Shown here: piece by piece, positions 35,302 to 62,850 of the stretch
Layout of the letters: each line of letters begins with the position of its first letter
How positions within the stretch are numbered: position 1 is the first letter of the stretch
From: Heterodontus francisci
Lineage: Eukaryota
Assembly: GCF_036365525.1 (NCBI RefSeq)
Contig: NC_090404.1
Coordinates: 3,162,001 to 3,226,000, forward strand
Reading direction: 5' to 3'
Length of the DNA: 64,000 nucleotides
The notes under the pieces: generated by a model
Told to the model about the DNA's origin: nothing
The model's input: the letters and a program-made list of their open reading frames with translations, nothing else
Database searches by the model: none
Made by a program: the position numbers and the translations under genes

Positions 35302-35358
35302 TAGGTTGCACCATTAGTTTGGTCCCAGATCCAAATATTAGCTGATTGATACGACTCA
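35302..35358 (-). other. TRAJ: J-alpha family A: SRINQLIFGSGTKLMVQP
   Basis: CACAGCA 35359, 12 bp, GCAGATACC; GTAAGC donor. Confidence 0.88.
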
Positions 35359-35678
35359 CACAGCATTACATGTTACTGCAGATACCTGATGCCAAGTGTA
35401 TAAGCTATTGATGAGATGAACTGCATGCTACATTTGTGGATTATCAATATTACAAGTTCAACTATTAACAAGTGTCATGTTTCCCATGTCATTCAAATCA
35501 ATTTAGGTTCATCCTCACACAATAACACTACAATTACACAATGTAAAATTATAGTTTAGTTTTGTCTATTTCTACGTGGTATCCATTGACAATCTGTACA
35601 TTATCTTGACCAGAATTCATAATTTTCTTGTAAACTAATTGACGTGGTCATTTTGAGGAATTATAATTGAGTTCTTAC

Positions 35679-35741
35679 CAGGATTAACAATGAGTTTGGT
35701 GCCTCCTCCAAATACCATTTTATCATATCCTCCAGAAGCCA
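35679..35741 (-). other. TRAJ: J-alpha family B: ASGGYDKMVFGGGTKLIVNP
   Basis: CACAGTA 35742, 12 bp, ACAAGAACT; GTAAGA donor. Confidence 0.92.
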
Positions 35742-35949
35742 CACAGTAACTGATCCCTTCACAAGAACTCAGGAGAGTGCTGGTTCCCGATGTACCATTA
35801 CTATCATCACTGATTTATTCTCATTGTCATTTCAATGACTTGAAATAACTCAGCAATCTAATTGTTATCTTCACTAGATTATTCATTAAAATTCTTTAAT
35901 TTCTTTTAGTCAGATTCGTGACATTATTCTTTCATAGGACTACACTTAC

Positions 35950-36009
35950 TGGGTACCACGATTAGTCTGGTCCCACCTCCAAAAATAAACTTGTAGCTCC
36001 CATCCCTCA
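35950..36009 (-). other. TRAJ: J-alpha family C: RDGSYKFIFGGGTRLIVVP
   Basis: CACAGCC 36010, 12 bp, ACAACAACC; GT donor. Confidence 0.9.
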
Positions 36010-36679
36010 CACAGCCCGACACTGCCTAACAACAACCTTCTGGATTAGTTATTTGTCTGTTTTACTGCTGCAATTGAAAGTAATAGCCACACATTTTGTC
36101 TGTTTACATATATGTTTTTATCCACCTATCTATCTCTCACTCTACATCTATCAATCCATCTGTGTACAAATAGGAGTAATGACTTAATGCTTCATGTATT
36201 ACATAGACAGGCATACATACATAAATATGTAGTAGCAACAGTGCATAATCAACCAAATCCACCCCCTGGTAATTATATTTGTTTAATGTTCATGAAATAA
36301 TTTTAACATTAAAATAATGTTCTAGCATTAGGAAAAAAATACACCACAGAAACAGGCTGTTCTGTCCAACTGGTCTATTCCAGCATTTTTGCTCCACAGG
36401 AACTTCTTCCCAGGCTCTTTATTTAATCCTACCAGGATATTCTTCAATTCCTTTCCCCCTGCTGTACTTATCCAGCTTCCCCTTAAATCCATACATGTTC
36501 CTAACCGCAACTATCCATGCCGTATCAAGTTCCACACTCCAAAATGAAGCAGCATAAATGTCAGAAAATTCAGGATTAATTGAACATATGGAGAAATTAT
36601 TTGATTCATTGTTGGCCGTACAGAGAACATACACGTGTGTCAATCGACAGATAGTCTATAGTTATTAATGAATACCTAC

Positions 36680-36742
36680 TTGGCTCCACAATTAACTTTG
36701 TTCCTTTTCCAAAGATAAGCTCATTGCCAATTCCAAAATTCA
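36680..36742 (-). other. TRAJ: J-alpha family D: NFGIGNELIFGKGTKLIVEP
   Basis: CACAGCA 36743, 12 bp, GCAAAAGCT; GTAGGT donor. Confidence 0.9.
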
Positions 36743-36951
36743 CACAGCATTGCATCCTTTAGCAAAAGCTCCCTTCATATTAACTGCAGTAATTGTTTGC
36801 TCATTCCGGCACCTATATTTGAACCCTTGACATCTTCCGATGCCATAATAGTGACACAAACCATTTTTAGAACAACATTGTCATTTATTAGGCAATCCTT
36901 GAGTTTTCTGTTCTAACATAGAAAACAGATATCCTTAAACATCACACTTGC

Positions 36952-37008
36952 TGGGTATAACCTGGAGTCTGGTCCCTGATCCAAAGATCAGCTTCACAGC
37001 AAGGTTCA
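36952..37008 (-). pseudogene. TRAJ: J-alpha family F, defective: NLAVKLIFGSGTRLQVIP
   Basis: Open frame, but heptamer AACAGCC (CAC lost) and GC donor. Confidence 0.8.
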
Positions 37009-37730
37009 AACAGCCTGATAGGCTGACACGAAACCAGCCAGCCATTCCCAGACATTACTTCACCTGTTGTTTCTTAAAGAACCATCCATATTTTCAGTTA
37101 TGTTTTGGAATGTTTACCTGAGCCTTTAGATTTATGACTCAGAAACTGTTAATATTTCCAATACCAATTAGACTTTAAACAGAATTGCATCAAATTTGTA
37201 GCCCAGAAACAGGTCATTCAGCCCAATTCATCTATGTCTGTACTCATGTCACACATGAGCCTCATCTCATCCTACATCATCTCACTCTTTCTGCATATCC
37301 ATCTGTTCCTTTCTCCACCGTGCATTTATCCTGCTTCACCTTAAATGCAGTTATGTTGTTCACATCAACTATTTCCTGTGGTAGCACGTTCCACATTCTC
37401 ACCACTCTCTGGGCAAGGAAGTTTCTCCTGAATTCCACATTGGATTTATTACTGATTATCTTATATTGACGACTCTTAGTTTAAATTTCCCAACAAGTGG
37501 AAAAAAATTGCTTTGTCTCCCCTATCAAACCCCTTCTTAATGTTAAAGACCTCTAATAGCTGATCCCTCTGCTGTGTGTTTTCTAGAGAAATGGTTCCTA
37601 GCCTGCTTAGTATTTCTTGATAGTTATTATTTAACGTTAATTATAAATAACTAACAATACTTATTAACAAAACAATATTTCGGCTTACATCATCATAATA
37701 AAAAAAAATAAAGAATTAGACTTCACTTAC

Positions 37731-37787
37731 TAGGTTCCACAATTAATTTGGCCCCAGATCCAAATGTTAGCTTATTGGCATTATTCA
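37731..37787 (-). other. TRAJ: J-alpha family A: NNANKLTFGSGAKLIVEP
   Basis: CACAGCA 37788, 12 bp, GCAGAAACC; GT donor. Confidence 0.9.
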
Positions 37788-38129
37788 CACAGCATTACAT
37801 ACCAGTGCAGAAACCCATTTATCTGATACCTATTATATAGAGTATCTGTGAAATGAACTGTATATTATATTTTTGGATTGTCAATATTCCAATTTAGATT
37901 GTTAACAAGTGACGAATATTGCATATTTCCCATCTCATTCAAATCAATGCAATTTCAATCAGCCTTACACTTTAATACTAACTATTACTCAATGTAAAAC
38001 TAGAGATTAATTTGATCTACCTCTGCTTGGTGTCCATTGACTATCTGTACATTATTTTGACCAGAATTCATTATTTGTTTGTAAACTAATCTGCATGGTC
38101 ATTTTGAAGAATGATTATTGAGTTCTTAC

Positions 38130-38192
38130 CAGGCTTAACATTGAGTCTGGTGCCTCCTCCAAATACCATTTTAGCATAGCCTGCAGATTCCA
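38130..38192 (-). other. TRAJ: J-alpha family B: ESAGYAKMVFGGGTRLNVKP
   Basis: CACAGTA 38193, 12 bp, ACAAGAACT; GT donor. Confidence 0.92.
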
Positions 38193-38400
38193 CACAGTAA
38201 CTGATCCCTTGACAAGAACTCAGGATAGTAATTGTTCCCTATGTACCACTGTAGTCACTACTGAATTAATCTCATTGGCGTTTCAATGACTTGAATTCAG
38301 TAAGCAAACTAATTGTTCTATTTTCTAGATTATTCATGACAATTCTTTAATTTCTTTAAATCAGATTTGTGACATTGTTCTCCCTTAAGACAACACTTAC

Positions 38401-38460
38401 TGGGTTCCACGATTAGTCTGGTCCCACTTCCAAAAATAAGCTTGTAGCTCCCAACATTCA
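38401..38460 (-). other. TRAJ: J-alpha family C: NVGSYKLIFGSGTRLIVEP
   Basis: CACAGCC 38461, 12 bp, ACAAAAACC; GT donor. Confidence 0.93.
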
Positions 38461-39074
38461 CACAGCCCTACACTGCCTAACAAAAACCTTCTGAGGTAAT
38501 TATTATTCTACATCTATCTTAATCTTGTAATTTAAAGTAGAGAGGCACAAATTTTACCTGTTCACTTTAAATATATGTTTTCATCTATTTCTCTACCAAC
38601 ATATAGGAATAGTAAATTGATGTTTCATAGACAGGCACATAGATGCATAAATATATAGAGGCATCAGTGCATATCAACAACAGACAGCCCTTGGCAATTA
38701 TATTTGCTCAATATCCATGAACTGATTTTATTATAATAATACATTACAAAGAAACAGGCGATTCTATCCAACTGGCCTATTCCAACATTTCTGCTCCACA
38801 TCAGCTTCCTCCCACCCTCTTTATCCAATCTTATCAGGGTATTGTTCTATCCCTTTCACCTTGCTGTACTTATCCAGCTTCCACTTAAATCCATACATGC
38901 TTCTCACTTTTGGAGCTTCATGTGGTCGCAAGTTACAGACTCCAAAACAAACTCTTACAATATGCAGGAACATTGAACAGACAGCAAAATTATTTGATTA
39001 ATTGTTGGCAGTACAGAGAACATACACATGTGCGTAAGTCAATAGATAGTCTATAGTTATTAATGAATACTTAC

Positions 39075-39131
39075 TTGGCTCCACAATTAACGTTGTCCCT
39101 TTTCCAAAGATATAGCCAACTCCAGCATTCA
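39075..39131 (-). other. TRAJ: J-alpha family D with in-frame 6-nt deletion: NAGVGYIFGKGTTLIVEP
   Basis: CACAGCA 39132, 12 bp, GCAAAAACT; GT donor. Confidence 0.88.
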
Positions 39132-40388
39132 CACAGCATTGCATCCTTTAGCAAAAACTGTCTTCAGATTTACTGCAGTCGTTTTTTTTTTGCTCATTCT
39201 GACAATGCCATATTCATGACACTATCTGTACAAATCGTTTTTACATGTCTATTGACATTAATTAGGCACACCTATTTTAATTATTATGATTTTCACTGAA
39301 GCATTACTAAATTTTCCAGTACAAAGCTAAGGCTTCAATTTATATATCTGACCCTCCGAATGCTTCCCCAGTATTTCAGAAAGTGCCACACTCTCTCAGT
39401 GCTTTCCTGAATTATCATCTTGGATTGTATATTTCATATGTAGTGTGTGGGTACACTTCATAATTTCCTGACAAACAGGATGGTCTGTTGAACCCAGTTA
39501 TGATTCCTGACACTTTTCTCTCCCAATTTCAGTCAGTTCTTTCATTAATGAGACCTTAGGTTGTTCTATTGGAATTGTGTTTCTTTATTATCCTGTAGTT
39601 ATCCTTATTATGGTAATTATGTTCCAGATTATTACCAGCATCAGTCTCCTTAATATAACTGAGGTAGAATTTTGGATAACATTTGGAATGTGATAAAAGG
39701 AACATCATGCAACTAAGTAATGCTAACAATAAACTGTTATGCATTGACATACTTTTTAAACAAATAAATGAGAGTAATATCTGATCAAACCTATTCTAAA
39801 ATAAGATGGATATGCAACTCAATCTCTGATCTAGCGCAATAATGTTGAGACCATTTGATGAGGTTACTTTCTGAGGGGCTTTATAATGTCTTCCTGAATA
39901 TTATTACACTATTGTTGAAAACTTTTAAATGAAAATTACGCACATGCCATTGCGAAAAGTCTATGATCACATTTAGTTAAAATGGCTCGCTATTACTGCA
40001 CAGCACAAGACAGCAGAAGTACATATTAGTTCCAACTCAATGTTCAACTAATGCAGATTTTGCGAGGAGCACAGAAAAGCTTTTGATGGAACATTAAGAG
40101 GGATGAAAATGTTTATAATGCAATTATGTACAATTAAATACTTATCGTCCAGAATTGTGTAAAGTCTGAAAAGTTTTATCCCAGTACTAACACCCTGTAT
40201 TCTTTGGAGAGTCACAGATGGGTCCAAATTATTGTTGGATGTTTCAAGAATGTCAAGCTCAATTGTGATATATATCAGTTTATTTTGAAGTTGAATAATT
40301 ATAAGACTAAAGGAGATTTAATGTGATTTATTTGACAGATAGTCTACTATTGGGAAAAAAAGGAACAGGGAGATATAAAACAACTTAC

Positions 40389-40448
40389 TGGGGTGAACTT
40401 GGAGCTCAGTCCCAGCTCCAAATATCACCTTGAAGGAGTCAGCACTCA
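40389..40448 (-). other. TRAJ: J-alpha family E: SADSFKVIFGAGTELQVHP
   Basis: CACACCA 40449, 12 bp, ACAAAAATC; GT donor. Confidence 0.87.
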
Positions 40449-40685
40449 CACACCATTACACCCCTCAACAAAAATCCTTTCCTTAACAATGATTCATCAC
40501 CCTGACACATTCCTAATTCACATTAAGAATCCCCTCACCGTGCTTGAAGTAGGCCATTTCCAAAATTTCATATCACAGCGGGGAGGGCCAAATTATGTAA
40601 AAGTTAATTGGATCAATATTTCAAAGAATTTGATGACATGCTTTTCTGTTCTAATACATAGAACTGAAATCCTTTAATATCTCAC

Positions 40686-40742
40686 TGGGTATAAAGTGGA
40701 GCCTGGTCCCTAATCCAAAAATCAGTTTATTAGCATGGTTTA
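40686..40742 (-). pseudogene. TRAJ: J-alpha family F, defective: NHANKLIFGLGTRLHFIP
   Basis: Heptamer position reads GACTGCC. Confidence 0.78.
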
Positions 40743-41445
40743 GACTGCCTGATAGGCTAACACAAAACCCTTTCCCAGCCTGCCATTCCCAGACATTACA
40801 TCACCTGTTGTTTATTAAAGAACAATACACATTTTGCGTTGTGTTTTGGAATGTTTATCCAAGCCTTTAAATTTATGACTCAGAAACTGTTAACATCGCC
40901 CACACCAACTAAAATCGCATTGAATGTTCAGCACAGAAAGAGGCCGTTTGGCCCAACGCATCTGTGCCCGTGTTCGTATTCCACATGAGCCTCATCTCAT
41001 TCTACTTCATCTCACCCTCTCTGCACATTCATCTGTTCCATTCTCCATCTATTTATCTAGCTTCCCCTTAAGAGCATCTATGCTATTTACATCAACTACT
41101 CCATGTGACAGCAAATTCCACATTCTCACAACTCTCTGGGTAATAAAGTTTCTCTGGAATTCTACATTGGATTTATTAGTTATGATCTTATATTGATGAT
41201 CCCTAGTTTTAGTCTGCCGACAAGTGGAAAAGTCTTTCCTATTCAAACCCCTTCTTAATGTTAAAGACCTGTAATAGTTGACCCCTTAGCCATGTATTTT
41301 CTAGGGAAATGGTCCCCAGCCTGTTTAGTATTTCTTGATAGTTATTATTTAACTTTAATTGCAAACAACCGATGATACTCATTAACAAAGCAATTTTTCC
41401 ACTAATAATATCATAATAAAAAATACAGAATTAAACTTCACTTAC

Positions 41446-41502
41446 TAGGTTCCACAGTTAGTTTGGTCCCAGATCCAAATGTTAGCTTGTTGATATTATT
41501 CA
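41446..41502 (-). other. TRAJ: J-alpha family A: NNINKLTFGSGTKLTVEP
   Basis: CACAGCA 41503, 12 bp, GCAGAAACC; GT donor. Confidence 0.92.
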
Positions 41503-41827
41503 CACAGCATGACAGACCAGTGCAGAAACCCCTTTACCTGTTGCCTATTATATAGACTATCCACGAAATGAACTGTATATGATATTTATGGATCAATATT
41601 GTAATTTAGATTTTTAACAAATGCTGAATATTGCATATTCCCCATTTCATTCAAATCAATGTAATTTCAATCAGTGAATCACATTTATACTAACTATTAC
41701 ACAATGTTCAACTAGAGTTTAATTTTGTCTGGATCTGCTTGGTGTCCATTGACAATCTGCACATTATTTTGACCACCATTTGTAATTTGTTCATAAAATA
41801 ATGTGCATGGTAATTTTGAGTTCTTAC

Positions 41828-41890
41828 CAGGATTAACAATGAGTTTGGTGCCTCCTCCAAATACCATATTACCATATCCTGCAGGATCCA
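41828..41890 (-). other. TRAJ: J-alpha family B: DPAGYGNMVFGGGTKLIVNP
   Basis: CACAGTA 41891, 12 bp, ACAAGAACT; GT donor. Confidence 0.92.
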
Positions 41891-42104
41891 CACAGTAACT
41901 GATCCCTTGACAAGAACTTAGGATTCCCTATGACATGTGCTGGTTCCCTATGTACCGCTGCAATCACTACTGATATATTCTCACTGGCGTTTCATTGACT
42001 TGAAATAACTAAGCAATCTAATTGTTTTACTTTCTAGATTATTCATGACAATTCCTTAGTTTCTTTCAATCTGATTTATGACAATTTCCTTTCCTAACAC
42101 TTAC

Positions 42105-42164
42105 TGGGTTCCACGATTAGTCTGGTCCCACTTCCAAAAATAAGCTTTCTGTCTGCAGTATTCA
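42105..42164 (-). other. TRAJ: J-alpha family C: NTADRKLIFGSGTRLIVEP
   Basis: CACAGCC 42165, 12 bp, ACAAAAACC; GT donor. Confidence 0.93.
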
Positions 42165-42837
42165 CACAGCCCTACACTGCCTAACAAAAACCTTCTGATT
42201 TACTTGTTATTAATTGTCTATCATATTGTTGAAATTCAAGGTAACAGCATTATTTTGCTTGTTCACTTTATATACATTTTTCCACCTATGCATCAGCTAT
42301 CTATTTTATTGTTCTGTCTATCTCTCACTCTCTATTTACATGTAGGAATAATGAAAAGCTTTGTACTGCATGACAAGCACATCGACACATAAATATATGG
42401 AGGCAACAGTGCACATCAACAAAAGCCACCCCTTAGCAATTATATTTGTTTAGTATTATTGAATTTATTTAAACATTATAATAATATTACATGACAAAGA
42501 ATTTACACCACATTAACAGACTGCTCCGTCCAATTGGCCTATTCTAACATTTCTGCTCCATAGGAGCTTCCTCCCGCCCACTTTATTTAATCCTATCAAG
42601 ATATTCTTCAATTCCTTTCTCGCTGTAGTAATTATCCAGCTTCCCCTTAAATCCACACATGCTACTTGCCTAAAAGCTCCATTTCGTAGCAAGTTACAGA
42701 CTCCAAAATGAAATGTTACAATATTCAGAAATGTTGAAGATATAGAGAAGATATATTGGATTGATTGCTGGCAGTACAGAGAACACACACACGTATGCAA
42801 GTCTATAGATGGTCTATAGTTATTAATGAATACCTAC

Positions 42838-42900
42838 TTGGCTCCACAGTTAACTTTGTCCCTTTTCCAAAGATGAGCTTAGAGCCAGCTCCAGTGTTCA
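42838..42900 (-). other. TRAJ: J-alpha family D: NTGAGSKLIFGKGTKLTVEP
   Basis: CACAGCA 42901, 12 bp, GCAAAAACT; GT donor. Confidence 0.93.
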
Positions 42901-44164
42901 CACAGCATTGCATCCTTTAGCAAAAACTCCCTTCAGATTTACTGTACTCGTTTTTGCTCATTCTGGCAACTATATTTGAATGCTTGGCATCATCCAATGC
43001 CATAATAGTGACACTATCTGTGCAAATCATTTTCACGTGTCCATTGACATTAATTAGGCATATCTATTTTCAATCATTCTGTTCATCAATCAAGCATAAC
43101 TAACTTTCCAGAAAAAAGCTAAGGCTTCGATTTATATATCAATCCCTCTGAATGTTCCCCAGTAATTCTGAAAGCGCTACACTTTCTCAATGCTTTCCTG
43201 AATTATCATCCTGGATTATATACTTAATGCACAGTATGTGAATACATCTCAGAACTTCCTAACAAACAGAATGGGCTGTTAATAACTGAACCAGGTTACG
43301 ATTTATGACACTTTAATCTCCCAATTTCAGTCAGTTCTTTCATTAATGAAACCTTAGGTTGTTCTATTGGAATCGTATTTCTTGATTATCCTATAGTTAA
43401 CCTCAATGGCTGGTAATTATGTACCAGATTATTACCAGCATTTGTGTCATTAATATAATTGAGGTAGAGTTATAGATAACATTTGGAATTTGAAAAAAAA
43501 ACATGCACCTAAATGTCAATAAACAATTATGCATTGACACATTTGTTATCCAATAACTAAGAGTGATAACTGATTAAACCTAATCCGAAATAAGATGGAC
43601 ATGCAATTCGCTCTCTGAACTAAAGCAGTAACGCTGAGACCATTTGATGAAGTCATTTTCAGATAGATCAATCACCTTATAATGTTTTCCTGGTCATTAT
43701 AACACTAGGTAAAATATTGTTGACAACTTTTTAATGAAAACTAGGCACACACCTTTGCTAAAAGTCTAAGATCACCATTTAATTAAAATTGTTCACTATC
43801 TCTACACAGTAGAAGAAAGCAGAAGTATGTATTAATTCCAATTCCATGTACGTTTTATACAGAATTTTCAAGGGCCATAAAAGAGCATTTAATGGAAAAT
43901 TAAGAACAATGACAATGGTTGTAATGCAATTAAGCCCATCAGCAATGTATCATGCAGAAACGCGTACTGTCTGAAAGTCTTTATCTCAGTACTGACTAAC
44001 ACCCTATATTCTTTGGAGAGTCACAGATGGGTCCAAATTGGTGTTGGATGTTTCAAGAATGTCAACTCCAATGTGCTAAACATCCAATAATATGAAGTTG
44101 AATAATTGTAGGTGGTGAAGACTAAAGAAAGAAAAAAAAGAACTTGGAGATGAAAATAACTTAC

Positions 44165-44224
44165 TGGGTTGCACTTTGAGCTTAGTCCCAGCTCCAAATA
44201 TCACCTTGAAGGAGTTAGCAGTCA
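44165..44224 (-). pseudogene. TRAJ: J-alpha family E with defective RSS: TANSFKVIFGAGTKLKVQP
   Basis: Coding and donor intact; heptamer CTCATCA 44225 (CAC lost), 12 bp, ACAAAAATC. Confidence 0.8.
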
Positions 44225-44473
44225 CTCATCATTACACCCCTCAACAAAAATCCTTTCCTTAATAATGATTCATCTTCCTGACACATTCCTAATTCACATT
44301 AAGAACATCCCCTCACCGTGCTTGAAGTAGAATCATTTCCAAATTAGGTATTCAGATCAGTGTGGACCAAGTTACGTGAAACTTAATTTGATCCATATTT
44401 TAATTAATTTGATGACATGCTTTTCTTTACTGTTCTAACATACAGAACTGAAATCCCTGAACATCTCACTCAC

Positions 44474-44524
44474 TGGGTATAACCTGTAGCCTGATCCAAA
44501 AATCAGCTTATTTAGCCAGGTTCA
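44474..44524 (-). pseudogene. TRAJ: J-alpha family F pseudogene
   Basis: 7-nt deletion after FGSG; heptamer position ATCTGCC. Confidence 0.78.
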
Positions 44525-53330: not shown

Positions 53331-53538
53331 CACAGTAACTGATCCCTTTACAAGAACTCAGGATAGTGCTGGTTCCCTACTTACCACTATGATCACCACT
53401 GATTTATTCTCATTGTCGTTTCAATGAGTTGAATTCAGCAACCAATCTAATTGTTCTACTTTCTAGAATATTCATGACAATTCTTTAATTTATTTAAATC
53501 TGATTTGTCATATTATTCCTTCATAGTACAACACTTAA

Positions 53539-53581
53539 TGGGTCCCACTTCCAAAAATAAGCTTTATGATCCCTGTATTCT
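53539..53581 (-). pseudogene. TRAJ: J-alpha family C pseudogene (NTGIIKLIFGSGT...)
   Basis: Heptamer absent while spacer 53582-53593 and nonamer 53594-53602 remain; 17-nt deletion in framework; donor GT>TT. Confidence 0.85.
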
Positions 53582-54153
53582 CTACACTGCCAAACAAAAA
53601 CCTTCTGAATGAATTATTATTCTTTGTCTATCTTAATTTTGCAATTTGCTTGTTCACTTTGCATGTATATTTTCACCTACCTATCAGCTATCTATTTCAC
53701 ATTCAGTACACAAATACATACATATAAAGAGGTATCAGAGCGTATCAACAAAAGGCTCCCCTTGGCAATTACATTTGTTTAACGTTGATGAATTAATTTT
53801 AGCTTTACAATAATATTGCATTAGAAAAAAATGACTTCACAGTTCTGTCCAACTGGTCTATTCCAGTGTTTCTGCTCCACAGGATCTTCCGCCTACCTTC
53901 TTTATCTGATCCTATCTGGATATTTTTCTATTCCTTTCTCCCTGCTGTAATTATCCAGCTTCCCCTTAAATCCATACATGATCCTCACCTAAAAACCTTC
54001 ATCAAGTTAATCTCCACAAAACAAAGCAGCCTACATGTTCCAAAATTCACGATTAATTGAACACCTAGAAACATTATTTGCTTCATTACAGGCCGTTCAG
54101 AGCACATACACATGTATGTAATAGATAACATACAGTTAATAATGAATACCTAC

Positions 54154-54216
54154 TTGGCGCCACAGTTAACTTTGTCCCTTTTCCAAAGATAAGCTTATTG
54201 GCAGCTCCAAGATGCA
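54154..54216 (-). other. TRAJ: J-alpha family D: HLGAANKLIFGKGTKLTVAP
   Basis: CACAGCA 54217, 12 bp, GCAAAAACT; GT donor. Confidence 0.92.
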
Positions 54217-55523
54217 CACAGCATTGTATCCTTTAGCAAAAACTCCCTTCAGATTTAGTGTCGTAATGCTTTGCTCATTCTGGCAACTATATTTGAATAC
54301 TTGGCTTCGTTCAATGCCATAATACTGACACTGTCTGTACAAACTGGTTCGATACATCCATTGACGTTTATTAGGCATATCTATTTTTAATTATTCTGAT
54401 CATCTCTCAAGCACAACTAATTTTCCATTAAAAAGCTAAGGCATCGATTTATATATCAATCTCTCTCAATACTTCTCCAGAACTTCCTAAAATGCTACAC
54501 TCTCTCAGTGCTTTCCTCAATTATTATCCTGGATGATATATTTCATATGTAGTGTGTGAACACATCTCATAATTTCCTATCAAACAGGATGATCTGTTAA
54601 CAATTGAACCCAGTTATGATTCCTAACACGTTTCTCTCACAATTTCAGTTGGTTGTTTCATTAATGAAATCTTAGGTTGTTCTATTGGAATCGTATTTCT
54701 TTATTATCCTGTAGTTAACCTCAGTTGCTGGTAATTATTTTCCAGATTTTGACTAGCAACAGTGTCTTCAATTGGATGTAGAATTATAGATAACATTTGG
54801 GATTTGATTAAAAAAACACTATGCAACTAAGTAACAATAATAATTATGTATTGACATACATTTTAAACCAATAACTAAAGTAGTCACTGATCAAACCTAA
54901 TCCGAAATAAAGTCGACATGCAACTGACTCTCTGAACTAAAGCAATAACGTTGAGACAATTTGATGAGACCATTTTCTGATGCAGCAATCACCTTATAAA
55001 GTCTTCCTGATCATTATCACACAAGGTAAAATATTCTTGACAATATTTTTAATGCAAATTAGAACACGTCATTGCTAAAAGTCTAAGATCACCATTTAAT
55101 TAAAATTGCTCACTATCTCTACACAGCATTAGAAAGCAGAGGTATGTATTAATTCCAACTCTGTGTACGTTTTATACAGAATTTGCAGGGGCAAAAAAAA
55201 AAAGAATCTAATGGAAAATTAAGAGGAATGGAACGGTTAAAATGTAATTGAGCAAACCACCATACTTATCATGCAGAAACCTGTATTGTCTTAAAGTCCT
55301 GACCTCAGTACTAACTAACACCCTATATTCTTTGGAGAGTCACAGATGGGTCCAAAATAGTGCTGGATGTATCAAGAGTGTCAACACCAATTGTACTAAA
55401 CGTCAGATATTTTGCAGTTGAATAAGTATGGATGTGAAGACTAAAGAAGGGATTTAATGTGATTTATTTAGGAGCTAGTCTATTGGAGAATAAAAAAAAA
55501 CATGGAGATGTAAAACAACTTAC

Positions 55524-56137: not shown

Positions 56138-56194
56138 TAGGTTGTACAATTAGCTTGGTCCCAGATCCAAATGTTAGCTTATCAAAATTGTTCA
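56138..56194 (-). other. TRAJ: J-alpha family A: NNFDKLTFGSGTKLIVQP
   Basis: CACAGCA 56195, 12 bp, GCAGAAACT; GT donor. Confidence 0.92.
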
Positions 56195-56531
56195 CACAGC
56201 ATTACATACCAGTGCAGAAACTCATTTACCTGATGCCTATTATATAGACTATCCACGAAATGAACTCTACATTGTATTTATGGATTATCAATACTCCAAG
56301 TTAGATGTTTAACAGATGCTGAATTCTGCATATTTCCAATTTCATTCAAATCGATGTAGTTTCAAACAATCTCACACGTTAGTATTAGTTATCACACAGT
56401 TTAAAGCTAGAGTTCAGTTTTGTTTAGATCTGCTTGGTGTCTATTGACAATAGATTATGTTGACCAGAATTCACTGTTTACTTGTACACTAATTTGATGA
56501 TAATTTTGAGGAACTATAATTGAGTTCTTAC

Positions 56532-56594
56532 CAAGATTAACAATGAGTTTGGTGCCTACTCCAAATACCATTTTACCATATCCTGTAGAATCCA
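56532..56594 (-). other. TRAJ: J-alpha family B: DSTGYGKMVFGVGTKLIVNL
   Basis: CACAGTA 56595, 12 bp, ACAAGAACC; GT donor. Confidence 0.92.
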
Positions 56595-56798
56595 CACAGT
56601 AACTGATCCCTTTACAAGAACCCAGGATAGTGCTGGTTCCCATGTACCACGACTGTCACCATTATTTTTCCCATTGTCATTTCAACGACATGAATTAAGT
56701 AAGCAATCTCATTGTTCTATTTTATAGATTATTCATACAATTCTTTAATTTCTTTTTGTCAGCTTTGTGACATTATTATTTCAAAATACAACACTTAC

Positions 56799-56858
56799 TG
56801 GGTTCCACGATTAGTCTGGTACCACTTCCAAAAATAAGCTTGTCAGTTCCAACATTCA
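56799..56858 (-). other. TRAJ: J-alpha family C: NVGTDKLIFGSGTRLIVEP
   Basis: CACAGCC 56859, 12 bp, ACAAAAACC; GT donor. Confidence 0.93.
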
Positions 56859-57470
56859 CACAGCCCTACACTGCCTAACAAAAACCTTCTATCTTACTGT
56901 TGCAATTTAAAGTGAACAGGCACCCATTTTACCTGCTCATTTTACATATGTATTTTCATCTATTTATCTCTCTAGGTACATATAGGAACAATAACTTTGT
57001 GATTCATATATTGCATAGACACGTGCATAGGCACATAAATATATAGAGGCATCACTGTATATCAATAAAAGACCCCCCATGGCAATTATATTTGTTTTTG
57101 AGGTAATTATAACACTTTAATAATATTACATTACAAAGAATTTACATCTGAGAAACAGGCTATTCCGTCCAACTGGTCTATTCCAGCATTTCTGTTGGAC
57201 ACGTGATTCTGCCCACCCTTTTACTCTAATCCTATCAGGCTCTTCCTCTAATCCTTTCTCCATGCTGTACTTATCCACCTTCCCCTTCAATCCACACACA
57301 CTATTTGGCTCAAGACCTCCATATGGTAGCAAGTTCCATACTCCAAAGTGAAGTGGCATAAATGTTCCAACATTCAGGAATGTTGAACATATAGAGAAAT
57401 TATTTTATTCAGAGAACATGCATATGTAAGTAAGTGCATAAATAGTCTACAGTTATTAATGAATACTTAC

Positions 57471-57533
57471 TTGGCTCCACAGTTAACTTTGTCCCCTTTC
57501 CAAAGATAAGCTTATAGCCACCTTCAGCATTCA
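57471..57533 (-). other. TRAJ: J-alpha family D: NAEGGYKLIFGKGTKLTVEP
   Basis: CACAGCA 57534, 12 bp, GCAAAAACT; GT donor. Confidence 0.93.
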
Positions 57534-58207
57534 CACAGCATTACGTCCTTCAGCAAAAACTCCCTTAAGACACACTGTAGTAATGTTTTTCTACATCTCG
57601 CAGCTATACTTGAATACTTTGCATCATCCAATGTCACAATAGTGACAGTATCTGCACAAACCGTTTTTACATGTCCATTGACATAAGTTAGGAATATCTA
57701 GTTTTAATTATTCTGTTTTAAAGTTAAGGCTACAATTTATATATCAGTACCTCCAAATGCTTCCCCACGTACTTCTGAAAGTGCTATGCTTTCTCAGTGC
57801 TTTCCTGAATTATCATCCTGGATTATATATTTCATTTGTAGTGTGTGGATAGATCTCATAATTTCCTAACAAACAGGATGGGCTGTTAATAGCTGAACCA
57901 GTTTATGATTTATGACACTTTTCTATCCCAATTTCAGTCAGTTCATTCATTAATGAAACTTTAAGTTGTTCTATTGAAATTATATTTCTATTTATCCTGT
58001 TGTTAATCTCAATGGTTGGTAATTCTGTTCCAGATTATTACCAGCATCAGTGTCTTTAATATAATTGAGGTAGAATTATAGATAACATTTGGAATTTTAT
58101 TAAAAGCACCATGCAAACAAATAACAATAATTATTAATTTCTAGATTATTCTTTAATTTCCTTTCAGTCACATTTGTGACATTATTTTTGCCTAAGAAAA
58201 CACTTAC

Positions 58208-58267
58208 TGGGTTCCACGATTAGTCTGGTCCCACTTCCAAAAATAAGCTTGATGTTTCCATCCCTCA
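58208..58267 (-). other. TRAJ: J-alpha family C: RDGNIKLIFGSGTRLIVEP
   Basis: CACAGCC 58268, 12 bp, ACAAAAACT; GT donor. Confidence 0.93.
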
Positions 58268-58911
58268 CACAGCCCTACACTGCCTAACAAAAACTTACTG
58301 TGTTAATTATCATTCTTTGCCTATTTAACCATTGCAACTGAAGTAACAGCCACCACTTTAACTTTTCATTTCTCATATATATTTTCATCTACCTCTCTAT
58401 CTCTGTCTACTTACATCTAGGAATAATAACTTAGTGCTTCATGTATTGAATAGACAGCCAGATAGATACATAAATATATAAACGCATCAGTGCATATAAA
58501 AAAACACCTCTTGGAAATTATATTTGCTTAATGTTGATGAATTAATGTTAACATTATGATAATATTACACGACACAGTATCTACATCACAGAAACAGGCT
58601 GTTCCTTCTAACTAGTCTATTCCAGCGTTTTTGTTCCACATGAGCTTCCTCCCACCCTCTTTCTCTAATCCTATCAGAGTACTCTTCAACTCCATTCTCC
58701 CCTTCTGGACTTATCCACCTTCCCCTTAAATTTATCCATGCTACTCGCCTCAACTACTTCATGTGGTGTCAAGTTACAGACTCCAAAATGAAATGTTACA
58801 ATATTCAGAAATGCTGAAGATACAGAGAGATTATTTGATTGATTATTGGCAGCACAGAGAACATATACATGTATGTAAATGGATAGTCAATAGTTATGAA
58901 TGAATACCTAC

Positions 58912-58974
58912 TTGGCTCCACAGTTAACTTCGTCCCTTTCCCAAAGATGAGCTTATAGCCAGCTACAACATTCA
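58912..58974 (-). other. TRAJ: J-alpha family D: NVVAGYKLIFGKGTKLTVEP
   Basis: CACAGCA 58975, 12 bp, A-rich nonamer at 58994; GT donor. Confidence 0.93.
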
Positions 58975-59689
58975 CACAGCATTGCATCCTTTAGCAAAAA
59001 ACCCCTTCATATTTACTGTAGCAATTTATTTGCTCATTCTGGCACCTATATTTGAATACTTGGCATAGTCCTATGCCATAATAGTGACACTATCTGCACA
59101 AATAATTTTACATGACTATTGACATTTATTAGGCATATTTATTGTATTTTTTCTGTTTTCCATGGAAACATGACTGATTTTACTTTACAAAGCTAAGGCT
59201 ACAATTTATATATCAGTCCCTCTGAATGCTTCCCAGTACTTCTGAAAGTGCTATGCTCTCTCGGTGCTTTCCTGAATTGTAATCCTAGATTATATATTTC
59301 ATATGTAGTGTGCGGATATATCTCATAATTTCCTAACAAACAGGCTGTTAATAATTGAACCAGGTTATGATTCCCAGCACATTTCTCTGCCAATTTCAGT
59401 CGGTTCTTTCATTCATGAAACCTTAAATTGTTCTATTGAAATTGCATTTCTTTATTATCCTGTAGTTAACCTCAATGGGTGGCAATTATATTCCAGATTA
59501 TTATCAGAATCAGTGTCTTTAATATAATTGAAGTAGAATTGTAGATAACATTTGAAATTTGATATAACACCGTGCAACTAACTAACAATAAACAATCTTA
59601 TTGTTTCTTTTTCTAGATTATTCATGGTAATTCTTTCATTTCTTTTCAATCGGTTTTGTGACATTATTCTTTCACGAGGTAACACTTAC

Positions 59690-59749
59690 TAGGTTCCACA
59701 ATTAGCCTGGTCCCATTTCCAAAAATAAGCTTGTTGCTTCCATCCCTCA
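59690..59749 (-). other. TRAJ: J-alpha family C: RDGSNKLIFGNGTRLIVEP
   Basis: CACAGCC 59750, 12 bp, ACAAAAACC; GT donor. Confidence 0.93.
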
Positions 59750-60391
59750 CACAGCCTTACACTGCCTAACAAAAACCTTCCTGTTAATTATTATTCAGCG
59801 TCTATGTTCTCATTGAAATTTAAAGTAAACAGGCGCCATTTTCACTTTTTAATTTCACATATATATTTTCATCTACCTCTCCACATCTATCTACCATCAT
59901 ATAGGAATATAACTTAGTTCTTCATATAGACAGATACATAAATATATAAATATATGGAGGCATTAGTGCACATCGAAATCCACCCCTTGCCAATTATATG
60001 TGCTTCAAGTTGAGGAATTAATTTTTAACATTATAATAATATTATATTTCATAGAATCTACACCACACAAACAGGCTGTTCTATCCAACTGGTCTACTCC
60101 CGAGTTTCTGCACCATATGAACTTCCTACCACCCTCTTTATCTAACCCTATCAGGGTATTGTTCTATTTCTTTCTCTCTGCTGTACTGACCCAGCTTCCC
60201 TTAAATTTATCCATGCTACTAGCCTCAATTACTCCATGTGGTATCAATTTACAGACTCCAAAATGAAATGTTGCCATATTCAGAAATCTTGAAGATATAG
60301 AGAAATTATGTGATTCATCGTAGGCAATGCCAGAGAATATAAACATGTATGTACGTGGATAGATAGTCCGTAGTCATTAATGAATACCTAC

Positions 60392-60454
60392 TTGGTACCA
60401 CAGTTAACTTCGTCCCTTTTCCAAAGACGAGATTAGTACCAGTGCCAGCATTCA
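60392..60454 (-). other. TRAJ: J-alpha family D: NAGTGTNLVFGKGTKLTVVP
   Basis: CACAGTA 60455, 12 bp, GCAAAAACT; GT donor. Confidence 0.93.
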
Positions 60455-61158
60455 CACAGTATTGCATCCTTTAGCAAAAACTCTCTTCAGATTTACTGTA
60501 ATAATGTGTTTGCTTCTCTTTAGGAACTATATTTAAATACTTGGCATTGTCAAATGCCAGAATAATGATGGTATCTGTACAAATCGTTGTTACATGACCA
60601 TTGACATTAATGAGGCGTATCTCATTTTTAATTATTCTGCTTTCCACTCAAGAATAACACATTTTGCATTAAAAAGCTAAGGCTTCGAATCAGTCCTTCT
60701 GAATGCTTCCCCAGTACTTCTGAAATTGCTACACTCAGTGCTTTCCTGAATTATCATCCTGGATTGTATATTTTATATGTAGTGTGTGAATACACATCAC
60801 AATTTCCTAACAAACAAGATGGGCTGTTAACAATTGCACCCAGTTATCTTTCCTGACACTTTTCAATCCCACTTCCACTCTTTCCTTCATTAATGCAACC
60901 TTAGGTCGTTCTATTGGAATCGCCTTTCTTTATTATCCTGTAGTTAACCTCAATGGCTGGTAATCATGTTCCAGATTATTACCAGCATCATTGTCTTTAA
61001 TATAATTGAGGTGGAATTATAGATAACATTTGGAAGTTGATAAAAACACCATGCAACTAAATAAGAATAATTGATCCATTTTCTAAATTATTTATGACAA
61101 TTCTTTACTTTCTTTTCAATAAGATTTGTGAGATTATTCTTCATAAGACAACACTTAC

Positions 61159-61218
61159 TGGGTTCCACGATTAGTCTGGTCCCACTTCCAAAAATAAGCT
61201 TGATGCCTGCATCCTTCA
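61159..61218 (-). other. TRAJ: J-alpha family C: KDAGIKLIFGSGTRLIVEP
   Basis: CACAGCC 61219, 12 bp, ACAAAAACC; GT donor. Confidence 0.93.
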
Positions 61219-61831
61219 CACAGCCCTACACTGCCTAACAAAAACCTGCTGAGTTCATTATTATTCTTTGCTCATTTTACCATTGCAATTTGAAGCAATA
61301 GCCACCACGTTAACTTTTTCATTTCACATATATATTTTCATCTACCTCTCTGCCTACATATAGGAATAATAACATAGTGCTTCATGTATTGCATAGACAG
61401 CCACATAGATACATAAATATATAAACGCATTGGTGCATATCAAAAGCCACCCCTTGCCAATTTTATTTGCTTAATGTTAAATTAATATTAACAATATAAT
61501 AATATTACATTGCACAGTATCTCCACCACAGATACAGGCTGTTCTATCCAACTGGTCTATTCTGTTCCACATGAGCTTCCTCCCACCCTCTTTCTCTAAT
61601 CCAATCAGGGTACTCTTCGATTCCTTTCTCCCCTTCTGTACGTATCCTGCTTCCCCTTAAATTTATCCGTGCTCCTCGCCTCAACAACACCATGTGGTGT
61701 CAAGTTACAGACTCCAAAATGAAATGTTATTATCTCCAGAAATGTTGAAGATATAGAGAGATTATGTGATTGATTGTTGGCCGTACACATATATGTGAGT
61801 GTAGTGTCTATAGTTATTAATGAATACCTAC

Positions 61832-61894
61832 TTGGTTCCACAGTTAACTTTGTCCCTTTTCCAAAGATAAGTTTATTGCCAACTCCAGTGTTCA
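61832..61894 (-). other. TRAJ: J-alpha family D: NTGVGNKLIFGKGTKLTVEP
   Basis: CACAGTA 61895, 12 bp, GCAAAAACT; GT donor. Confidence 0.93.
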
Positions 61895-62615
61895 CACAGT
61901 ATTGCATCCTTTAGCAAAAACTCTCTTCAGCTATAATGTTGTTAAATGATGCTTATTTTGACAGCTATATATGAATATTCGGCATCACCTATGTCATAAT
62001 AGTGACACTATATGTACAAATCGTTTTTCCAAGACCTTTGACATTGGTTAGGTATATCTATTTTTAATTGTTCGGTTTTCCACTCAAGGCTAAAGCTTTT
62101 TCATTAAAAAGCTAAGGCTTCGATTTATATATCAGTCCGTTTGAATGCTACCCCAGTACTTCTGAAATTGTTACACTCTCTGAGTACTTCAGTGAACTAT
62201 CATCCTGGATTATAGATTTTATATGCAGTGTGTGGAGGCATCTCACAATTTTCTAACAAGCAGGATGGGCTGTTAACAATTGAACTCAGTTATGATTCCT
62301 GACATTTTTATCTCTCAATTCCAGTCAGCTCCTTCATTGATTAAACCTTAGGTTGTTCTATTGAAATTGCATTTCTTTATTATCCTGTAGTCAACATCAA
62401 TGGCTAGTAATTATGTTCCAGATTATTACCAGATTCACTGTCTTCAATATAATTGAGGTAGAATTACAGATGACATTTGGAATTTGAAAAACACACAATT
62501 CAACTAAGTAACAATAAGCTATCTAATTGTTCCATTTTCTATATTATTCATGACAATTCTTTAATTTCTTTTCATTCAGATTTGTGACATTATTCTTTCA
62601 GAAGAAAACACTTAC

Positions 62616-62675
62616 TGGGTTCCACGATTAGTCTGGTCCCACTTCCAAAAATAAACTTGAAGTTTCCATCCCTCA
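62616..62675 (-). other. TRAJ: J-alpha family C: RDGNFKFIFGSGTRLIVEP
   Basis: CACAGCG 62676, 12 bp, ACAAAAACT; GT donor. Confidence 0.92.
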
Positions 62676-62850
62676 CACAGCGCTACACTGCCTAACAAAA
62701 ACTTACTGTGTTAATTATTACTCTTTGTCTAATTTACCATTGCAATTTAAAGTAAACAGACACCACTTTAACTTATTCATTTAACACAAATATTTTCATC
62801 TACCTCTTTATCTCTATTTACCTACATATAGGAATAATAACTTAGTGCTT

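What the first reader, a model, noticed from the sequence alone, without database searches (positions are those of the whole stretch)
35302..62703. Germline hypervariability confined to the CDR3-encoding codons of duplicated Js
Seen: all ten intact family-C copies differ in their first five codons (RDGSY, NVGSY, NTADR, NLGSN, YTGNR, NVGTD, RDGNI, RDGSN, KDAGI, RDGNF). The adjacent 12-bp spacer CTACACTGCCTA is identical in eight of them and the framework is nearly invariant. Families A, B and D show the same pattern. Sub-motifs (RDG, NVG, GSY, GSN) recur in patchwork fashion. Inference: strong diversifying selection, micro-gene-conversion, or a mutational process focused next to the RSS (RAG nicking or AID; many copies have an AGCT hotspot at the K-L codons, and TCR-alpha somatic hypermutation is reported in nurse shark).
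Basis: partly seen in the sequence, partly recalled or inferred. Interest (0 to 1): 0.8.

Follow-up and report, generated by a model that had tools for sequence, protein, structure and literature searches.

The report
Shark TCR-alpha J array, variable tips
This is a working shark T-cell-receptor alpha J-segment array built from old tandem duplications, in which the recombination signals and framework are held constant while the few antigen-contact codons drift freely, and in one family change about twice as fast as neutral DNA; this is an expected pattern, not a new mutational mechanism.

Summary
All ten intact family-C J segments carry the listed five-codon motifs. The 12-bp spacer is identical in eight, and RSS and framework are nearly invariant.

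The cassettes are not recent copies. They are only 75-88% identical, and intergenic diversity (pi) is about 0.25. Most of the contrast is therefore purifying selection on RSS (pi 0.05-0.13) and FR4 (0.06-0.09) against an old neutral background.

CDR3-codon diversity by family:
- C: exceeds the background, 0.44-0.46 (about 1.8-fold; nonsynonymous rate 2.8 times intergenic).
- A: exceeds it less securely, over 9 nt only.
- B and D: equal to the background.
- F: below it.
- Pseudo-J family E: no peak.

Variation sits at codon positions 1-2. The two coding bases next to the heptamer never vary, J length is fixed, and there is no AID-type spectrum. A RAG- or AID-focused germline mutation process is therefore not supported.

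Relaxed constraint plus modest diversifying selection is the best reading. Short-tract gene conversion may contribute: one sister pair differs at 11 of 19 nt, and a 653-bp identical tract lies nearby.

RNA contigs show a J spliced to TRAC and a productive V-J join.

Verdict: an ordinary new example of a known kind.

The parts
35950..36037 (-). Family C J + 12-RSS, CDR3 codons RDGSY
   Evidence: FGGG, GTAAGT donor
38401..38488 (-). Family C J + RSS, NVGSY
42105..42192 (-). Family C J + RSS, NTADR
46038..46125 (-). Family C J + RSS, NLGSN. Its CDR3 (46077-46095) differs at 11 of 19 nt from the sister copy at 49868-49886 and at only 3 of 21 nt from the copy at 38438-38458.
49829..49916 (-). Family C J + RSS, YTGNR(GF); the most divergent CDR3, with no close donor in the window
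53522..53609 (-). Family C pseudo-J: heptamer region deleted and a 17-nt FR4 deletion
56799..56886 (-). Family C J + RSS, NVGTD
58208..58295 (-). Family C J + RSS, RDGNI
59690..59777 (-). Family C J + RSS, RDGSN (FGNG)
61159..61246 (-). Family C J + RSS, KDAGI
62616..62703 (-). Family C J + RSS, RDGNF
36680..36770 (-). Family D J + RSS, NFGIGN
39075..39159 (-). Family D J + RSS with an in-frame 6-nt deletion (NAGVGY-IFGKG)
42838..42928 (-). Family D J + RSS, NTGAGS
46764..46854 (-). Family D J + RSS, NTGFGN; lies inside the 653-bp tract identical to the next cassette
50552..50642 (-). Family D J + RSS, NTGFGN (identical to 46764-46854)
54154..54244 (-). Family D J + RSS, HLGAAN
57471..57561 (-). 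Family D J + RSS, NAEGGY
58912..59002 (-). Family D J + RSS, NVVAGY
60392..60482 (-). Family D J + RSS, NAGTGT
61832..61922 (-). Family D J + RSS, NTGVGN
35302..35386 (-). Family A J + RSS, SRIN
37731..37815 (-). Family A J + RSS, NNAN
41446..41530 (-). Family A J + RSS, NNIN
45368..45452 (-). Family A J + RSS, NNVG
49163..49247 (-). Family A J + RSS, NNVN; seen spliced from its last base (49163) to TRAC exon 1 in RNA-like contigs
52877..52961 (-). Family A J + RSS, NNFG
56138..56222 (-). Family A J + RSS, NNFD
35679..35769 (-). Family B J + RSS, ASGGYD
38130..38220 (-). Family B J + RSS, ESAGYA
41828..41918 (-). Family B J + RSS, DPAGYG
45768..45858 (-). Family B J + RSS, DSTGYG
49560..49650 (-). 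Family B J + RSS, DATTNA; seen joined in frame at 49616 to a V end (..YYCAATA) in RNA-like contigs
53268..53358 (-). Family B J + RSS, ATGGYG
56532..56622 (-). Family B J + RSS, DSTGYG (FGVG; final P changed to L)
36952..37039 (-). Family E J-like segment with a degenerate heptamer
40686..40773 (-). Family E J-like segment with a degenerate heptamer
44467..44554 (-). Family E pseudo-J (stop codon, FR4 deletion)
48389..48476 (-). Family E pseudo-J (stop codon, FR4 deletion)
52138..52225 (-). Family E pseudo-J (stop codon, FR4 deletion)
40389..40476 (-). Family F J + RSS, SADSF (conserved CDR3)
44165..44252 (-). Family F J + RSS, TANSF; heptamer ends GAGTG
48088..48175 (-). Family F J + RSS, SADSF
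51843..51930 (-). Family F J + RSS, SADSF; heptamer ends GAGTG
46383..47035 (-). 653-nt tract with 1 mismatch to 50171-50823, in cassettes otherwise 9-11% diverged; recent gene conversion or exchange
50171..50823 (-). Partner of the 653-nt identical tract
22328..22609 (-). TCR-alpha constant region exon 1 (C1-set domain), the splice target of the J segments

Best explanation
Window 28-64 kb (minus strand) is the J-C part of a shark TCR-alpha locus. At least 49 J segments lie upstream of TRAC exon 1. Forty-four of them belong to six families arranged as a tandem cassette, D-C-B-A-E-F, about 3.7 kb long and present in 7 copies, followed upstream by at least 5 shorter D-C units of about 1.45 kb. 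The duplications are old: copies are 75-88% identical. Since then, purifying selection has held the parts that must work the same way in every copy. These are the nonamer, spacer and heptamer of the 12-RSS, the TG microhomology at the coding end, K-L-I-FGXG-FR4 and the splice donor. The boundaries of this conservation are sharp at the edges of the functional elements. The 4-6 codons in between encode the J-derived half of CDR3-alpha. They are constrained only to stay in frame and at a fixed length. They therefore diverge at about the neutral rate in families B and D, and about twice that rate through amino-acid-changing substitutions in family C. This is consistent with selection favouring J duplicates that add new CDR3 loops. 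Family F shows the opposite, a CDR3 kept constant. Shown here: the anatomy, the rates, and use of the J segments in rearranged and spliced mRNA. Inferred: that the family-C excess is due to selection for diversity (faster replacement, or protection of differences from homogenisation) rather than chance.
For: Anatomy. Cassette identity of 75-88%. Diversity: intergenic 0.23-0.25; RSS 0.05-0.13; FR4 0.06-0.09; CDR3 C 0.44-0.46, A 0.41, D 0.27-0.29, B 0.25; F 0.067 and pseudo-J E 0.167 against 0.168 intergenic. ML relative rates on the intergenic tree (intergenic 0.73-0.79 under the same model): C 1.87-2.15 (CI 1.3-3.1), A 1.99, D about 1.0-1.1, B 0.92, RSS 0.14-0.42, FR4 0.18-0.28. Family C: pN 0.454, pS 0.271; codon positions 0.33/0.58/0.33. 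Codon model tied to the intergenic rate: s=1.36, omega=2.06; with s=1, omega=2.81, LRT 18.95. TG and the heptamer end are invariant and length is fixed. Function: an X5 contig ends at the last base of J-A (49163) and continues with the exact first 24 nt of the C1-set exon after its cag acceptor. Another contig joins J-B at 49616 in frame to a V end reading ..YYCAATA. Context: the TG microhomology at J 5' ends is conserved in cartilaginous fish, and germline J shapes CDR3-alpha (PMC10322711; PMC13396459).
Against: With the synonymous rate left free, omega>1 in C is not significant (LRT 2.2), because only 5 codons are available. The window-based tail probability is only about 0.02 and reaches 0.07 on jackknife. 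Dropping the three NT-type copies lowers the ratio to 1.34. The family-A excess is synonymous (s=3.2, omega=0.62). Absence of stop codons is not significant (P=0.08). Synonymous sites of FR4 in C, A and B evolve at only about 0.35 of the intergenic rate. Protein-level purifying selection alone does not explain that. Use of family-C J segments in mRNA was not shown directly.
Confidence: 0.6

Rival explanations
1. Short-tract (under 43 nt) germline gene conversion between paralogous J segments is the main source of the CDR3 mosaic. It moves blocks of CDR3 codons between copies while the identical RSS and FR4 on either side hide the tract ends.
For: Sister cassettes at 46 and 50 kb differ by 9-11% in their flanks. 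Their family-C CDR3s differ at 11 of 19 nt, with 0 differences in the 33 nt before and the 46 nt after (binomial P=3e-7). Pair-specific markers at -29 and +14 bound the event to under 43 nt. Five of the derived states in C46071 match the GS(N/Y) motif of C38434, from which it differs at 3 of 21 nt although the flanks are 21% apart. C35983 differs at 3 of 21 nt from C59723 and C62649 although its flanks are 30% apart. A true exchange tract of 653 bp exists in the same cassette pair.
Against: No donor for the C49862 CDR3 exists in the window. The label-permutation parsimony test shows CDR3 tree signal (z=1.6) within the range of intergenic controls (mean 2.5, minimum -0.8). Apart from the 653-bp tract, the runs test gives only borderline short tracts. 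Shared motifs can also be retained ancestry or convergence. Conversion alone would homogenise rather than diversify unless selection is added.
Confidence: 0.15
2. Pure relaxation. The CDR3 codons are simply unconstrained and drift neutrally. The family-C and family-A excess is local rate heterogeneity or chance, and no positive selection acts.
For: Families B and D sit on the intergenic background. About 1-2% of intergenic 15-nt windows are as diverse as the family-C CDR3, rising to 7% on jackknife. Omega>1 is not significant with s free. Absence of stop codons is not significant.
Against: The nonsynonymous rate in C is 2.8 times intergenic (LRT 18.95), and D is also above 1 (1.63; LRT 4.3). 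Codon position 3 is at or below the background while positions 1-2 exceed it in C, D and B. Length and frame are kept in 36 of 37 intact J segments. Family F shows that these codons can be under selection.
Confidence: 0.2
3. A germline mutational process focused beside the RSS, either RAG nicking with open-and-shut repair or AID deamination at hotspots, raises the mutation rate of the first J codons.
For: The variable patch is close to the RSS. AGCT is present at the K-L codons in 8 of 11 C copies. Its C is a T in three unrelated copies. In family A the excess is at synonymous sites. Somatic hypermutation of TCR-alpha exists in nurse shark thymocytes (PMC5931798).
Against: The bases touching the heptamer (TG) and the heptamer end are invariant in all 37 intact J segments, and variation starts at coding base 3 or later. 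There is no length heterogeneity or indel as RAG repair would leave. The transition fraction is 0.45 against 0.48 intergenic, and WRC/GYW G/C sites are no more variable than other G/C sites. The synonymous rate in C is about intergenic. Families B, D and F carry RSSs and show no excess. Pseudo-J family E shows no peak. The reported SHM is somatic and is not inherited.
Confidence: 0.03

Closest known systems
TRAJ arrays of jawed vertebrates (61 in human, 60 in mouse, 128 in Atlantic salmon with many duplicates; PMC8559430)
   Same: Dozens of short J exons, each with a 12-RSS, FGXG, a conserved FR4 and a splice donor, lie upstream of a single TRAC. The N-terminal (CDR3) part is the diverse part. 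Expansion is by duplication.
   Different: Here the array is visibly built from a six-J cassette repeated 7 times plus a two-J sub-cassette repeated at least 5 times. Paralogous intergenic DNA is therefore available as an internal neutral yardstick.
Diversifying selection on CDR codons of germline V gene families (Tanaka and Nei 1989 and Su and Nei 2001, from my own knowledge; TRAV/TRBV CDR1/2 in PMC13396459)
   Same: Among paralogues, antigen-contact codons change faster than framework codons and mainly by amino-acid replacement.
   Different: Here it concerns the J-encoded half of CDR3. It is only detectable in one of six families, and is significant only relative to the intergenic rate.
Microhomology-directed TRA assembly in fishes (Giorgetti et al. 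2023, PMC10322711)
   Same: The TG at the first two coding bases of J and a fixed RSS position relative to the frame, reported as conserved in a shark, are invariant in all intact J segments here. This implies that germline J codons pass largely unchanged into CDR3-alpha.
   Different: That work did not address rates of divergence among duplicated J segments. Junction statistics were not measured here; only one V-J join was seen.
Germline micro-gene-conversion in multigene immune families (MHC class I/II patchwork; chicken Ig pseudo-V conversion is its somatic analogue; from my own knowledge)
   Same: Short blocks of differences lie between otherwise similar paralogues and motifs recur in patchwork. 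A definite 653-bp exchange tract is present in the array.
   Different: No donor-recipient pair was demonstrated for a CDR3 block, and the array-wide tests are not significant.
Somatic hypermutation of shark TCR-alpha (Ott et al. 2018, PMC5931798)
   Same: Same locus and clade.
   Different: It is somatic, thymic and AID-linked. The germline differences here show no AID spectrum and spare the AGCT-containing K-L codons.

Membership tests
TRAJ gene segment | 12-bp-spacer RSS (nonamer GGTTTTTGT-like, heptamer ending CTGTG) directly 5' of the coding end | tested here: met
   met in families A, B, C and D and in two F copies. The other two F heptamers end GAGTG. Degenerate in E and deleted in C53555.
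TRAJ gene segment | FGXG motif and a conserved FR4 ending in a phase-1 GT splice donor | tested here: met
   FG(S/K/G/A/N)G and GTAAGT, GTAGGT or GTAAGA in all intact copies.
TRAJ gene segment | Splicing of J to the TCR-alpha constant exon | tested here: met
   an X5 contig leaves J-A at 49163 and continues with 22609-22586, immediately after a cag acceptor. Shown for one J only.
TRAJ gene segment | Somatic V-J rearrangement at the RSS/coding border | tested here: met
   an X5 contig joins J-B at 49616 (6 nt trimmed) in frame to a sequence reading ..YYCAATA. Shown for one J only, and X5 is labelled RNA only by guess.
TRAC (TCR-alpha constant) | C1-set Ig domain with TCR-alpha-specific signature | tested here: inconclusive
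   C1-set 1.9e-8 (met); DUF1968 (the TCR-alpha C family) at E 0.0084, below the cut-off. PDB hits are generic Ig constant domains. The assignment as alpha rests on the array of about 50 J segments and on locus context.
Diversifying (positive) selection | Nonsynonymous rate above the neutral (intergenic) rate | tested here: met
   C omega|s=1 = 2.81 (LRT 18.95); D 1.63 (LRT 4.3); B 1.56 (not significant); pN 0.454 against intergenic pi 0.247.
Diversifying (positive) selection | omega (dN/dS within the same codons) significantly above 1 | tested here: inconclusive
   C omega 2.06, LRT 2.2; B 2.57, LRT 1.8; D 1.49, LRT 1.3; A 0.62. There are too few codons.
Germline gene conversion | Pairwise identical fragment longer than permutation expectation (Sawyer/GENECONV logic) | tested here: met
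   653 nt with 1 mismatch between 46383-47035 and 50171-50823, p<=0.0005. This covers family D, not a CDR3 patch.
Germline gene conversion | CDR3 blocks with an identifiable donor and tree incongruence | tested here: inconclusive
   partial donor match for C46071, none for C49862; incongruence not significant.
AID-type hypermutation footprint | Excess change at WRC/GYW G/C sites and a transition bias | tested here: not met
   hotspot against other G/C sites 0.22 vs 0.20 in C; transition fraction 0.45 vs 0.48 intergenic.
RAG open-and-shut scar | Indels or base changes at the heptamer/coding junction and variable coding-end length | tested here: not met
   TG and the heptamer end are invariant. 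The heptamer-to-FGXG distance is fixed within each family, apart from one in-frame 6-nt deletion far from the junction.

The most novel reading that the evidence does not exclude
Selection for CDR3-alpha diversity in a species with largely template-directed V-J joining keeps islands of divergence at the five J tip codons, inside cassettes that are otherwise being exchanged or homogenised. Tracts range from 653 bp down to under 43 nt. Germline short-tract conversion would then shuffle CDR3 modules between J paralogues, an inherited counterpart of somatic Ig gene conversion.
Probability: 0.15. Interest if true: 0.55.

Novelty: new member of a known kind. Interest (0 to 1): 0.3.

Why it matters
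The finding shows, with an internal neutral yardstick, how a TCR-alpha J array evolves. Signals and framework are frozen. Loop-tip codons are free, and in one family they are pushed to diversify. That fits the idea that in fishes, where V-J joining adds little, inherited J diversity supplies CDR3-alpha diversity.

There is also a practical point. J paralogues with identical FR4 but different first five codons can be mistaken for one J with junctional N/P additions or somatic hypermutation when shark TCR-alpha cDNAs are analysed without the germline array.

It does not reveal a new mutational mechanism.

Tried and rejected
- **Targeted RAG or AID mutation.** Rejected on the invariant junction bases, fixed J length, the mutation spectrum, and control families F and E.
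- **'Recent duplicates' premise.** Rejected: self-BLAST gives 75-88% identity between cassettes.
- **Stop-codon avoidance as proof of selection.** Not significant (P=0.08).
- **Tree-incongruence (label permutation) as proof of patchwork conversion.** Not significant against intergenic controls.
- **Search for a donor of the C49862 CDR3 in the window.** None within 3 mismatches.
- **Homogenising conversion as the cause of RSS and FR4 conservation.** Judged less likely. Conservation starts and stops within a few bases of the nonamer and the splice donor. Low FR4 synonymous rates in C, A and B remain unexplained.
- **Protein Atlas look-up of the TRAC exon.** Failed.
- **PDB sequence search.** Gave only generic Ig constant domains.
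- **First paper search.** Polluted by 'trajectory' matches; one search had a syntax error.
- **Large protein search.** Not used, because the family scan and the splice evidence settled the constant exon.

Full report
**What is there**

Scanning all six frames for FGXG-type motifs finds 7 chance hits on the plus strand and 62 on the minus strand. Those between 28.2 and 62.7 kb are J segments. Each has:
- a nonamer, a 12-bp spacer and a heptamer ending CTGTG;
- a coding end starting with TG;
- 4-6 variable codons;
- K-L-I-FGXG-T-x-L-x-V-x-P;
- a GT donor one base into the next codon.

Forty-four J segments fall into six families. In the direction of transcription (minus strand) the order is D-C-B-A-E-F. 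This cassette is about 3.7 kb long and is repeated seven times between 35.3 and 57.6 kb. The two lowest-coordinate cassettes and the highest one lack E and/or F.

Upstream lie shorter D-C units of about 1.45 kb, from 57.5 kb to beyond the LINE fragment at 62.86-63.83 kb. Homologous C-upstream spacer sequence resumes at 63.83-64.0 kb, so the array continues past the window.

Five unique J segments lie between 28.2 and 34.2 kb. The ORF at 22299-22649 contains a C1-set domain (E 1.9e-8), with a weak hit to the TCR-alpha constant family DUF1968.

**It is a working TCR-alpha J-C region**

I laid contigs of four runs from the assembly's own sample on 45200-51199, which is 6,000 letters.

- **Splicing.** Run X5 is labelled RNA only by guess. 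It contains a contig that stops exactly at the last coding base of J-A49196 (49163). It continues with 24 letters that match 22609-22586 exactly, directly after a cag acceptor. That is J spliced to constant exon 1.
- **Rearrangement.** Another X5 contig leaves J-B49593 at 49616, six bases inside the coding end. It continues with a sequence whose reverse complement reads ..A-M-Y-Y-C-A-A-T-A, in frame with the J. That is a productive V-J join in which four of the six variable J codons survive into CDR3.

Use of family-C J segments was not displayed.

Other notes of this scan call the genome a shark and place TCR alpha/delta V segments beyond the window's high end. I did not test that. It agrees with the orientation found here. 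I built no joined J+C model and searched none.

**Checking the observation**

The ten motifs, the spacer count (8 exact, 3 with one mismatch, 0.3 expected by chance) and the near-invariant framework are all correct.

Self-BLAST shows the cassettes are only 75-88% identical. I aligned two blocks:
- the D-to-C block, 10 copies;
- the D-to-A block, 7 copies.

Pairwise diversity (pi) and ML relative rates on the intergenic tree:

| Region | pi | ML relative rate |
|---|---|---|
| Intergenic | 0.23-0.25 | 0.73-0.79 |
| RSS | 0.05-0.13 | 0.14-0.42 |
| K-L-I plus FR4 | 0.06-0.09 | 0.18-0.28 |
| CDR3, family C (15 nt) | 0.44-0.46 | 1.87-2.15 (CI 1.3-3.1) |
| CDR3, family A (9 nt) | 0.41 | 1.99 (CI 1.2-3.3) |
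| CDR3, family D | 0.27-0.29 | 0.98-1.10 |
| CDR3, family B | 0.25 | 0.92 |

(pi; rates.)

The family-C CDR3 falls in the top 0.5-2% of intergenic 15-nt windows. The family-A value falls in the top 1%.

In the E-F block:
- family F has CDR3 pi 0.067 against 0.168 intergenic, equal to its own FR4;
- pseudo-J family E has 0.167 in the CDR3-equivalent and 0.163 in FR4, both equal to the background.

Most of the striking contrast therefore comes from conservation of RSS and FR4 against an old, diverged background. Hypervariability is the smaller part.

The empirical tail then ranges from 0.002 to 0.07. Removing the three NT-type copies lowers the ratio to 1.34.

**Selection or mutation?**

- **Nei-Gojobori counts for family C.** pN is 0.454 and pS is 0.271, about intergenic.
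- **Diversity by codon position**:

| Family | Position 1 | Position 2 | Position 3 |
|---|---|---|---|
| C | 0.33 | 0.58 | 0.33 |
| D | 0.36 | 0.37 | 0.17 |
| B | 0.31 | 0.32 | 0.13 |

- **Codon model with the synonymous rate expressed relative to the intergenic tree**:
  - C: s=1.36, omega=2.06. With s fixed at 1, omega=2.81 (LRT 18.95). With s free, omega>1 is not significant (LRT 2.2), because there are only five codons.
  - D: 1.63 (LRT 4.3).
  - B: 1.56 (not significant).
  - A: the excess is synonymous (s=3.2, omega=0.62).
- **Against a process focused at the RSS:**
  - The last five heptamer bases and the first two coding bases (TG) are invariant in all 37 intact J segments.
  - The heptamer-to-FGXG distance is fixed within each family, apart from one in-frame 6-nt deletion.
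  - The transition fraction is 0.45 against 0.48 intergenic.
  - WRC/GYW G/C sites are no more variable than other G/C sites.
  - Families B, D and F have RSSs and no excess.
  - The AGCT-bearing K-L codons are among the conserved ones.
- **Stop codons.** Their absence is not significant (P=0.08).

**Conversion**

A runs test in the manner of GENECONV finds one clear event. Positions 46383-47035 and 50171-50823 are identical at 652 of 653 nt, in cassettes that are otherwise 9-11% apart. This explains why D46797 and D50585 are identical.

In the same cassette pair the family-C CDR3s differ at 11 of 19 nt. There are no differences in the 33 nt before or the 46 nt after (P=3e-7). Pair-specific markers at -29 and +14 bound the event to under 43 nt.

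Polarising with the nearest copies gives two results:
- C46071 carries several changes that recreate the GS(N/Y) motif of C38434. The two differ at 3 of 21 nt although their flanks are 21% apart.
- C49862 carries four private changes and has no donor in the window.

C35983 (RDGSY) differs at only 3 of 21 nt from the distal RDG copies although the flanks are 30% apart.

This is suggestive of short-tract exchange or of retention and convergence. A label-permutation parsimony test does not separate the CDR3 (z=1.6, p=0.10) from intergenic controls (mean z 2.5, range -0.8 to 4.5).

**Why RSS and FR4 are so flat**

Conservation begins within a few bases of the nonamer and ends right after the splice donor. 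That argues for function-bounded purifying selection rather than conversion tracts.

One point remains unexplained. Synonymous sites of FR4 evolve at only 0.34-0.38 of the intergenic rate in C, A and B (LRT 4.8-8.5), but at 1.03 in D. RNA-level constraint on a 60-nt exon, or some homogenisation, are both possible.

**Comparison with what is known**

- Large duplicated TRAJ arrays are known, for example 128 in salmon with many duplicates (PMC8559430).
- The TG at J position 1-2 and fixed RSS phasing are reported as conserved in a shark and linked to template-directed joining with little junctional addition (PMC10322711).
- Diversifying selection on CDR codons of germline V families is classical.
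- I found no paper testing J tip codons against paralogous intergenic DNA in the searches I ran. That does not show none exists.
- Nurse-shark TCR-alpha hypermutation is somatic (PMC5931798). That study inferred J ends without a germline array. J families like C would complicate such inference.

**Verdict**

This is an ordinary birth-and-death TRAJ array. The loop-tip codons are free to vary, and in family C they are modestly accelerated. Short-tract exchange may contribute. No targeted germline mutator is indicated.

Noticed in passing
46383-47035 and 50171-50823: A 653-nt tract is identical but for 1 base between neighbouring cassettes that are otherwise 9-11% diverged. It marks a recent gene conversion or exchange event covering a family-D J.
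   Followed up: yes
FR4 codons of families C, A and B (e.g. 38401-38442): Synonymous sites evolve at only about 0.35 of the intergenic rate, whereas family D FR4 has s of about 1. The cause may be nucleotide- or RNA-level constraint or partial homogenisation; it is unexplained.
   Followed up: partly
53522-53609: The family-C pseudo-J lacks about 7-8 nt including the heptamer and has a 17-nt deletion in FR4. I only confirmed the deletions in the alignment.
   Followed up: partly
62860-63830 (minus strand): A reverse-transcriptase-like LINE fragment is inserted in the spacer upstream of C62649. Normal cassette spacer resumes at 63830-64000, so the J array continues beyond the window.
   Followed up: no
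48600-49000: This stretch has very high summed contig depth in all four runs (over 10,000 in the DNA run, against about 10-45 elsewhere). It is a high-copy interspersed repeat between families E and A.
   Followed up: no
38317-38376 and equivalent positions downstream of each family-C J: A stretch of about 60 nt in the intron after the family-C splice donor is about twice as conserved as the background (pi about 0.12 against 0.25). A second such patch lies mid-way between D and C.
   Followed up: no
28236, 29444, 30535, 32433, 34205 (F-codon positions, minus strand): Five single-copy J segments with FGXG lie between the cassette array and TRAC. They do not belong to families A-F.
   Followed up: no
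437-5482: A long minisatellite-like tandem array gives repetitive minus-strand ORFs (LSVSPLVTLCQFSV...), downstream of TRAC.
   Followed up: no
46129 to 49921 (run X5 joint): One RNA-like contig jumps exactly one cassette period (3791 nt) with 34 shared letters. This is most likely a k-mer assembly jump between paralogous cassettes, not a deletion allele or a splice.
   Followed up: no
50585 (run X5 loose end): A contig shares FGKG-FR4 with D50585 but carries different upstream codons (reads ..NAARDKLI). It is probably another family-D paralogue outside this stretch, or a V-J junction.
   Followed up: no
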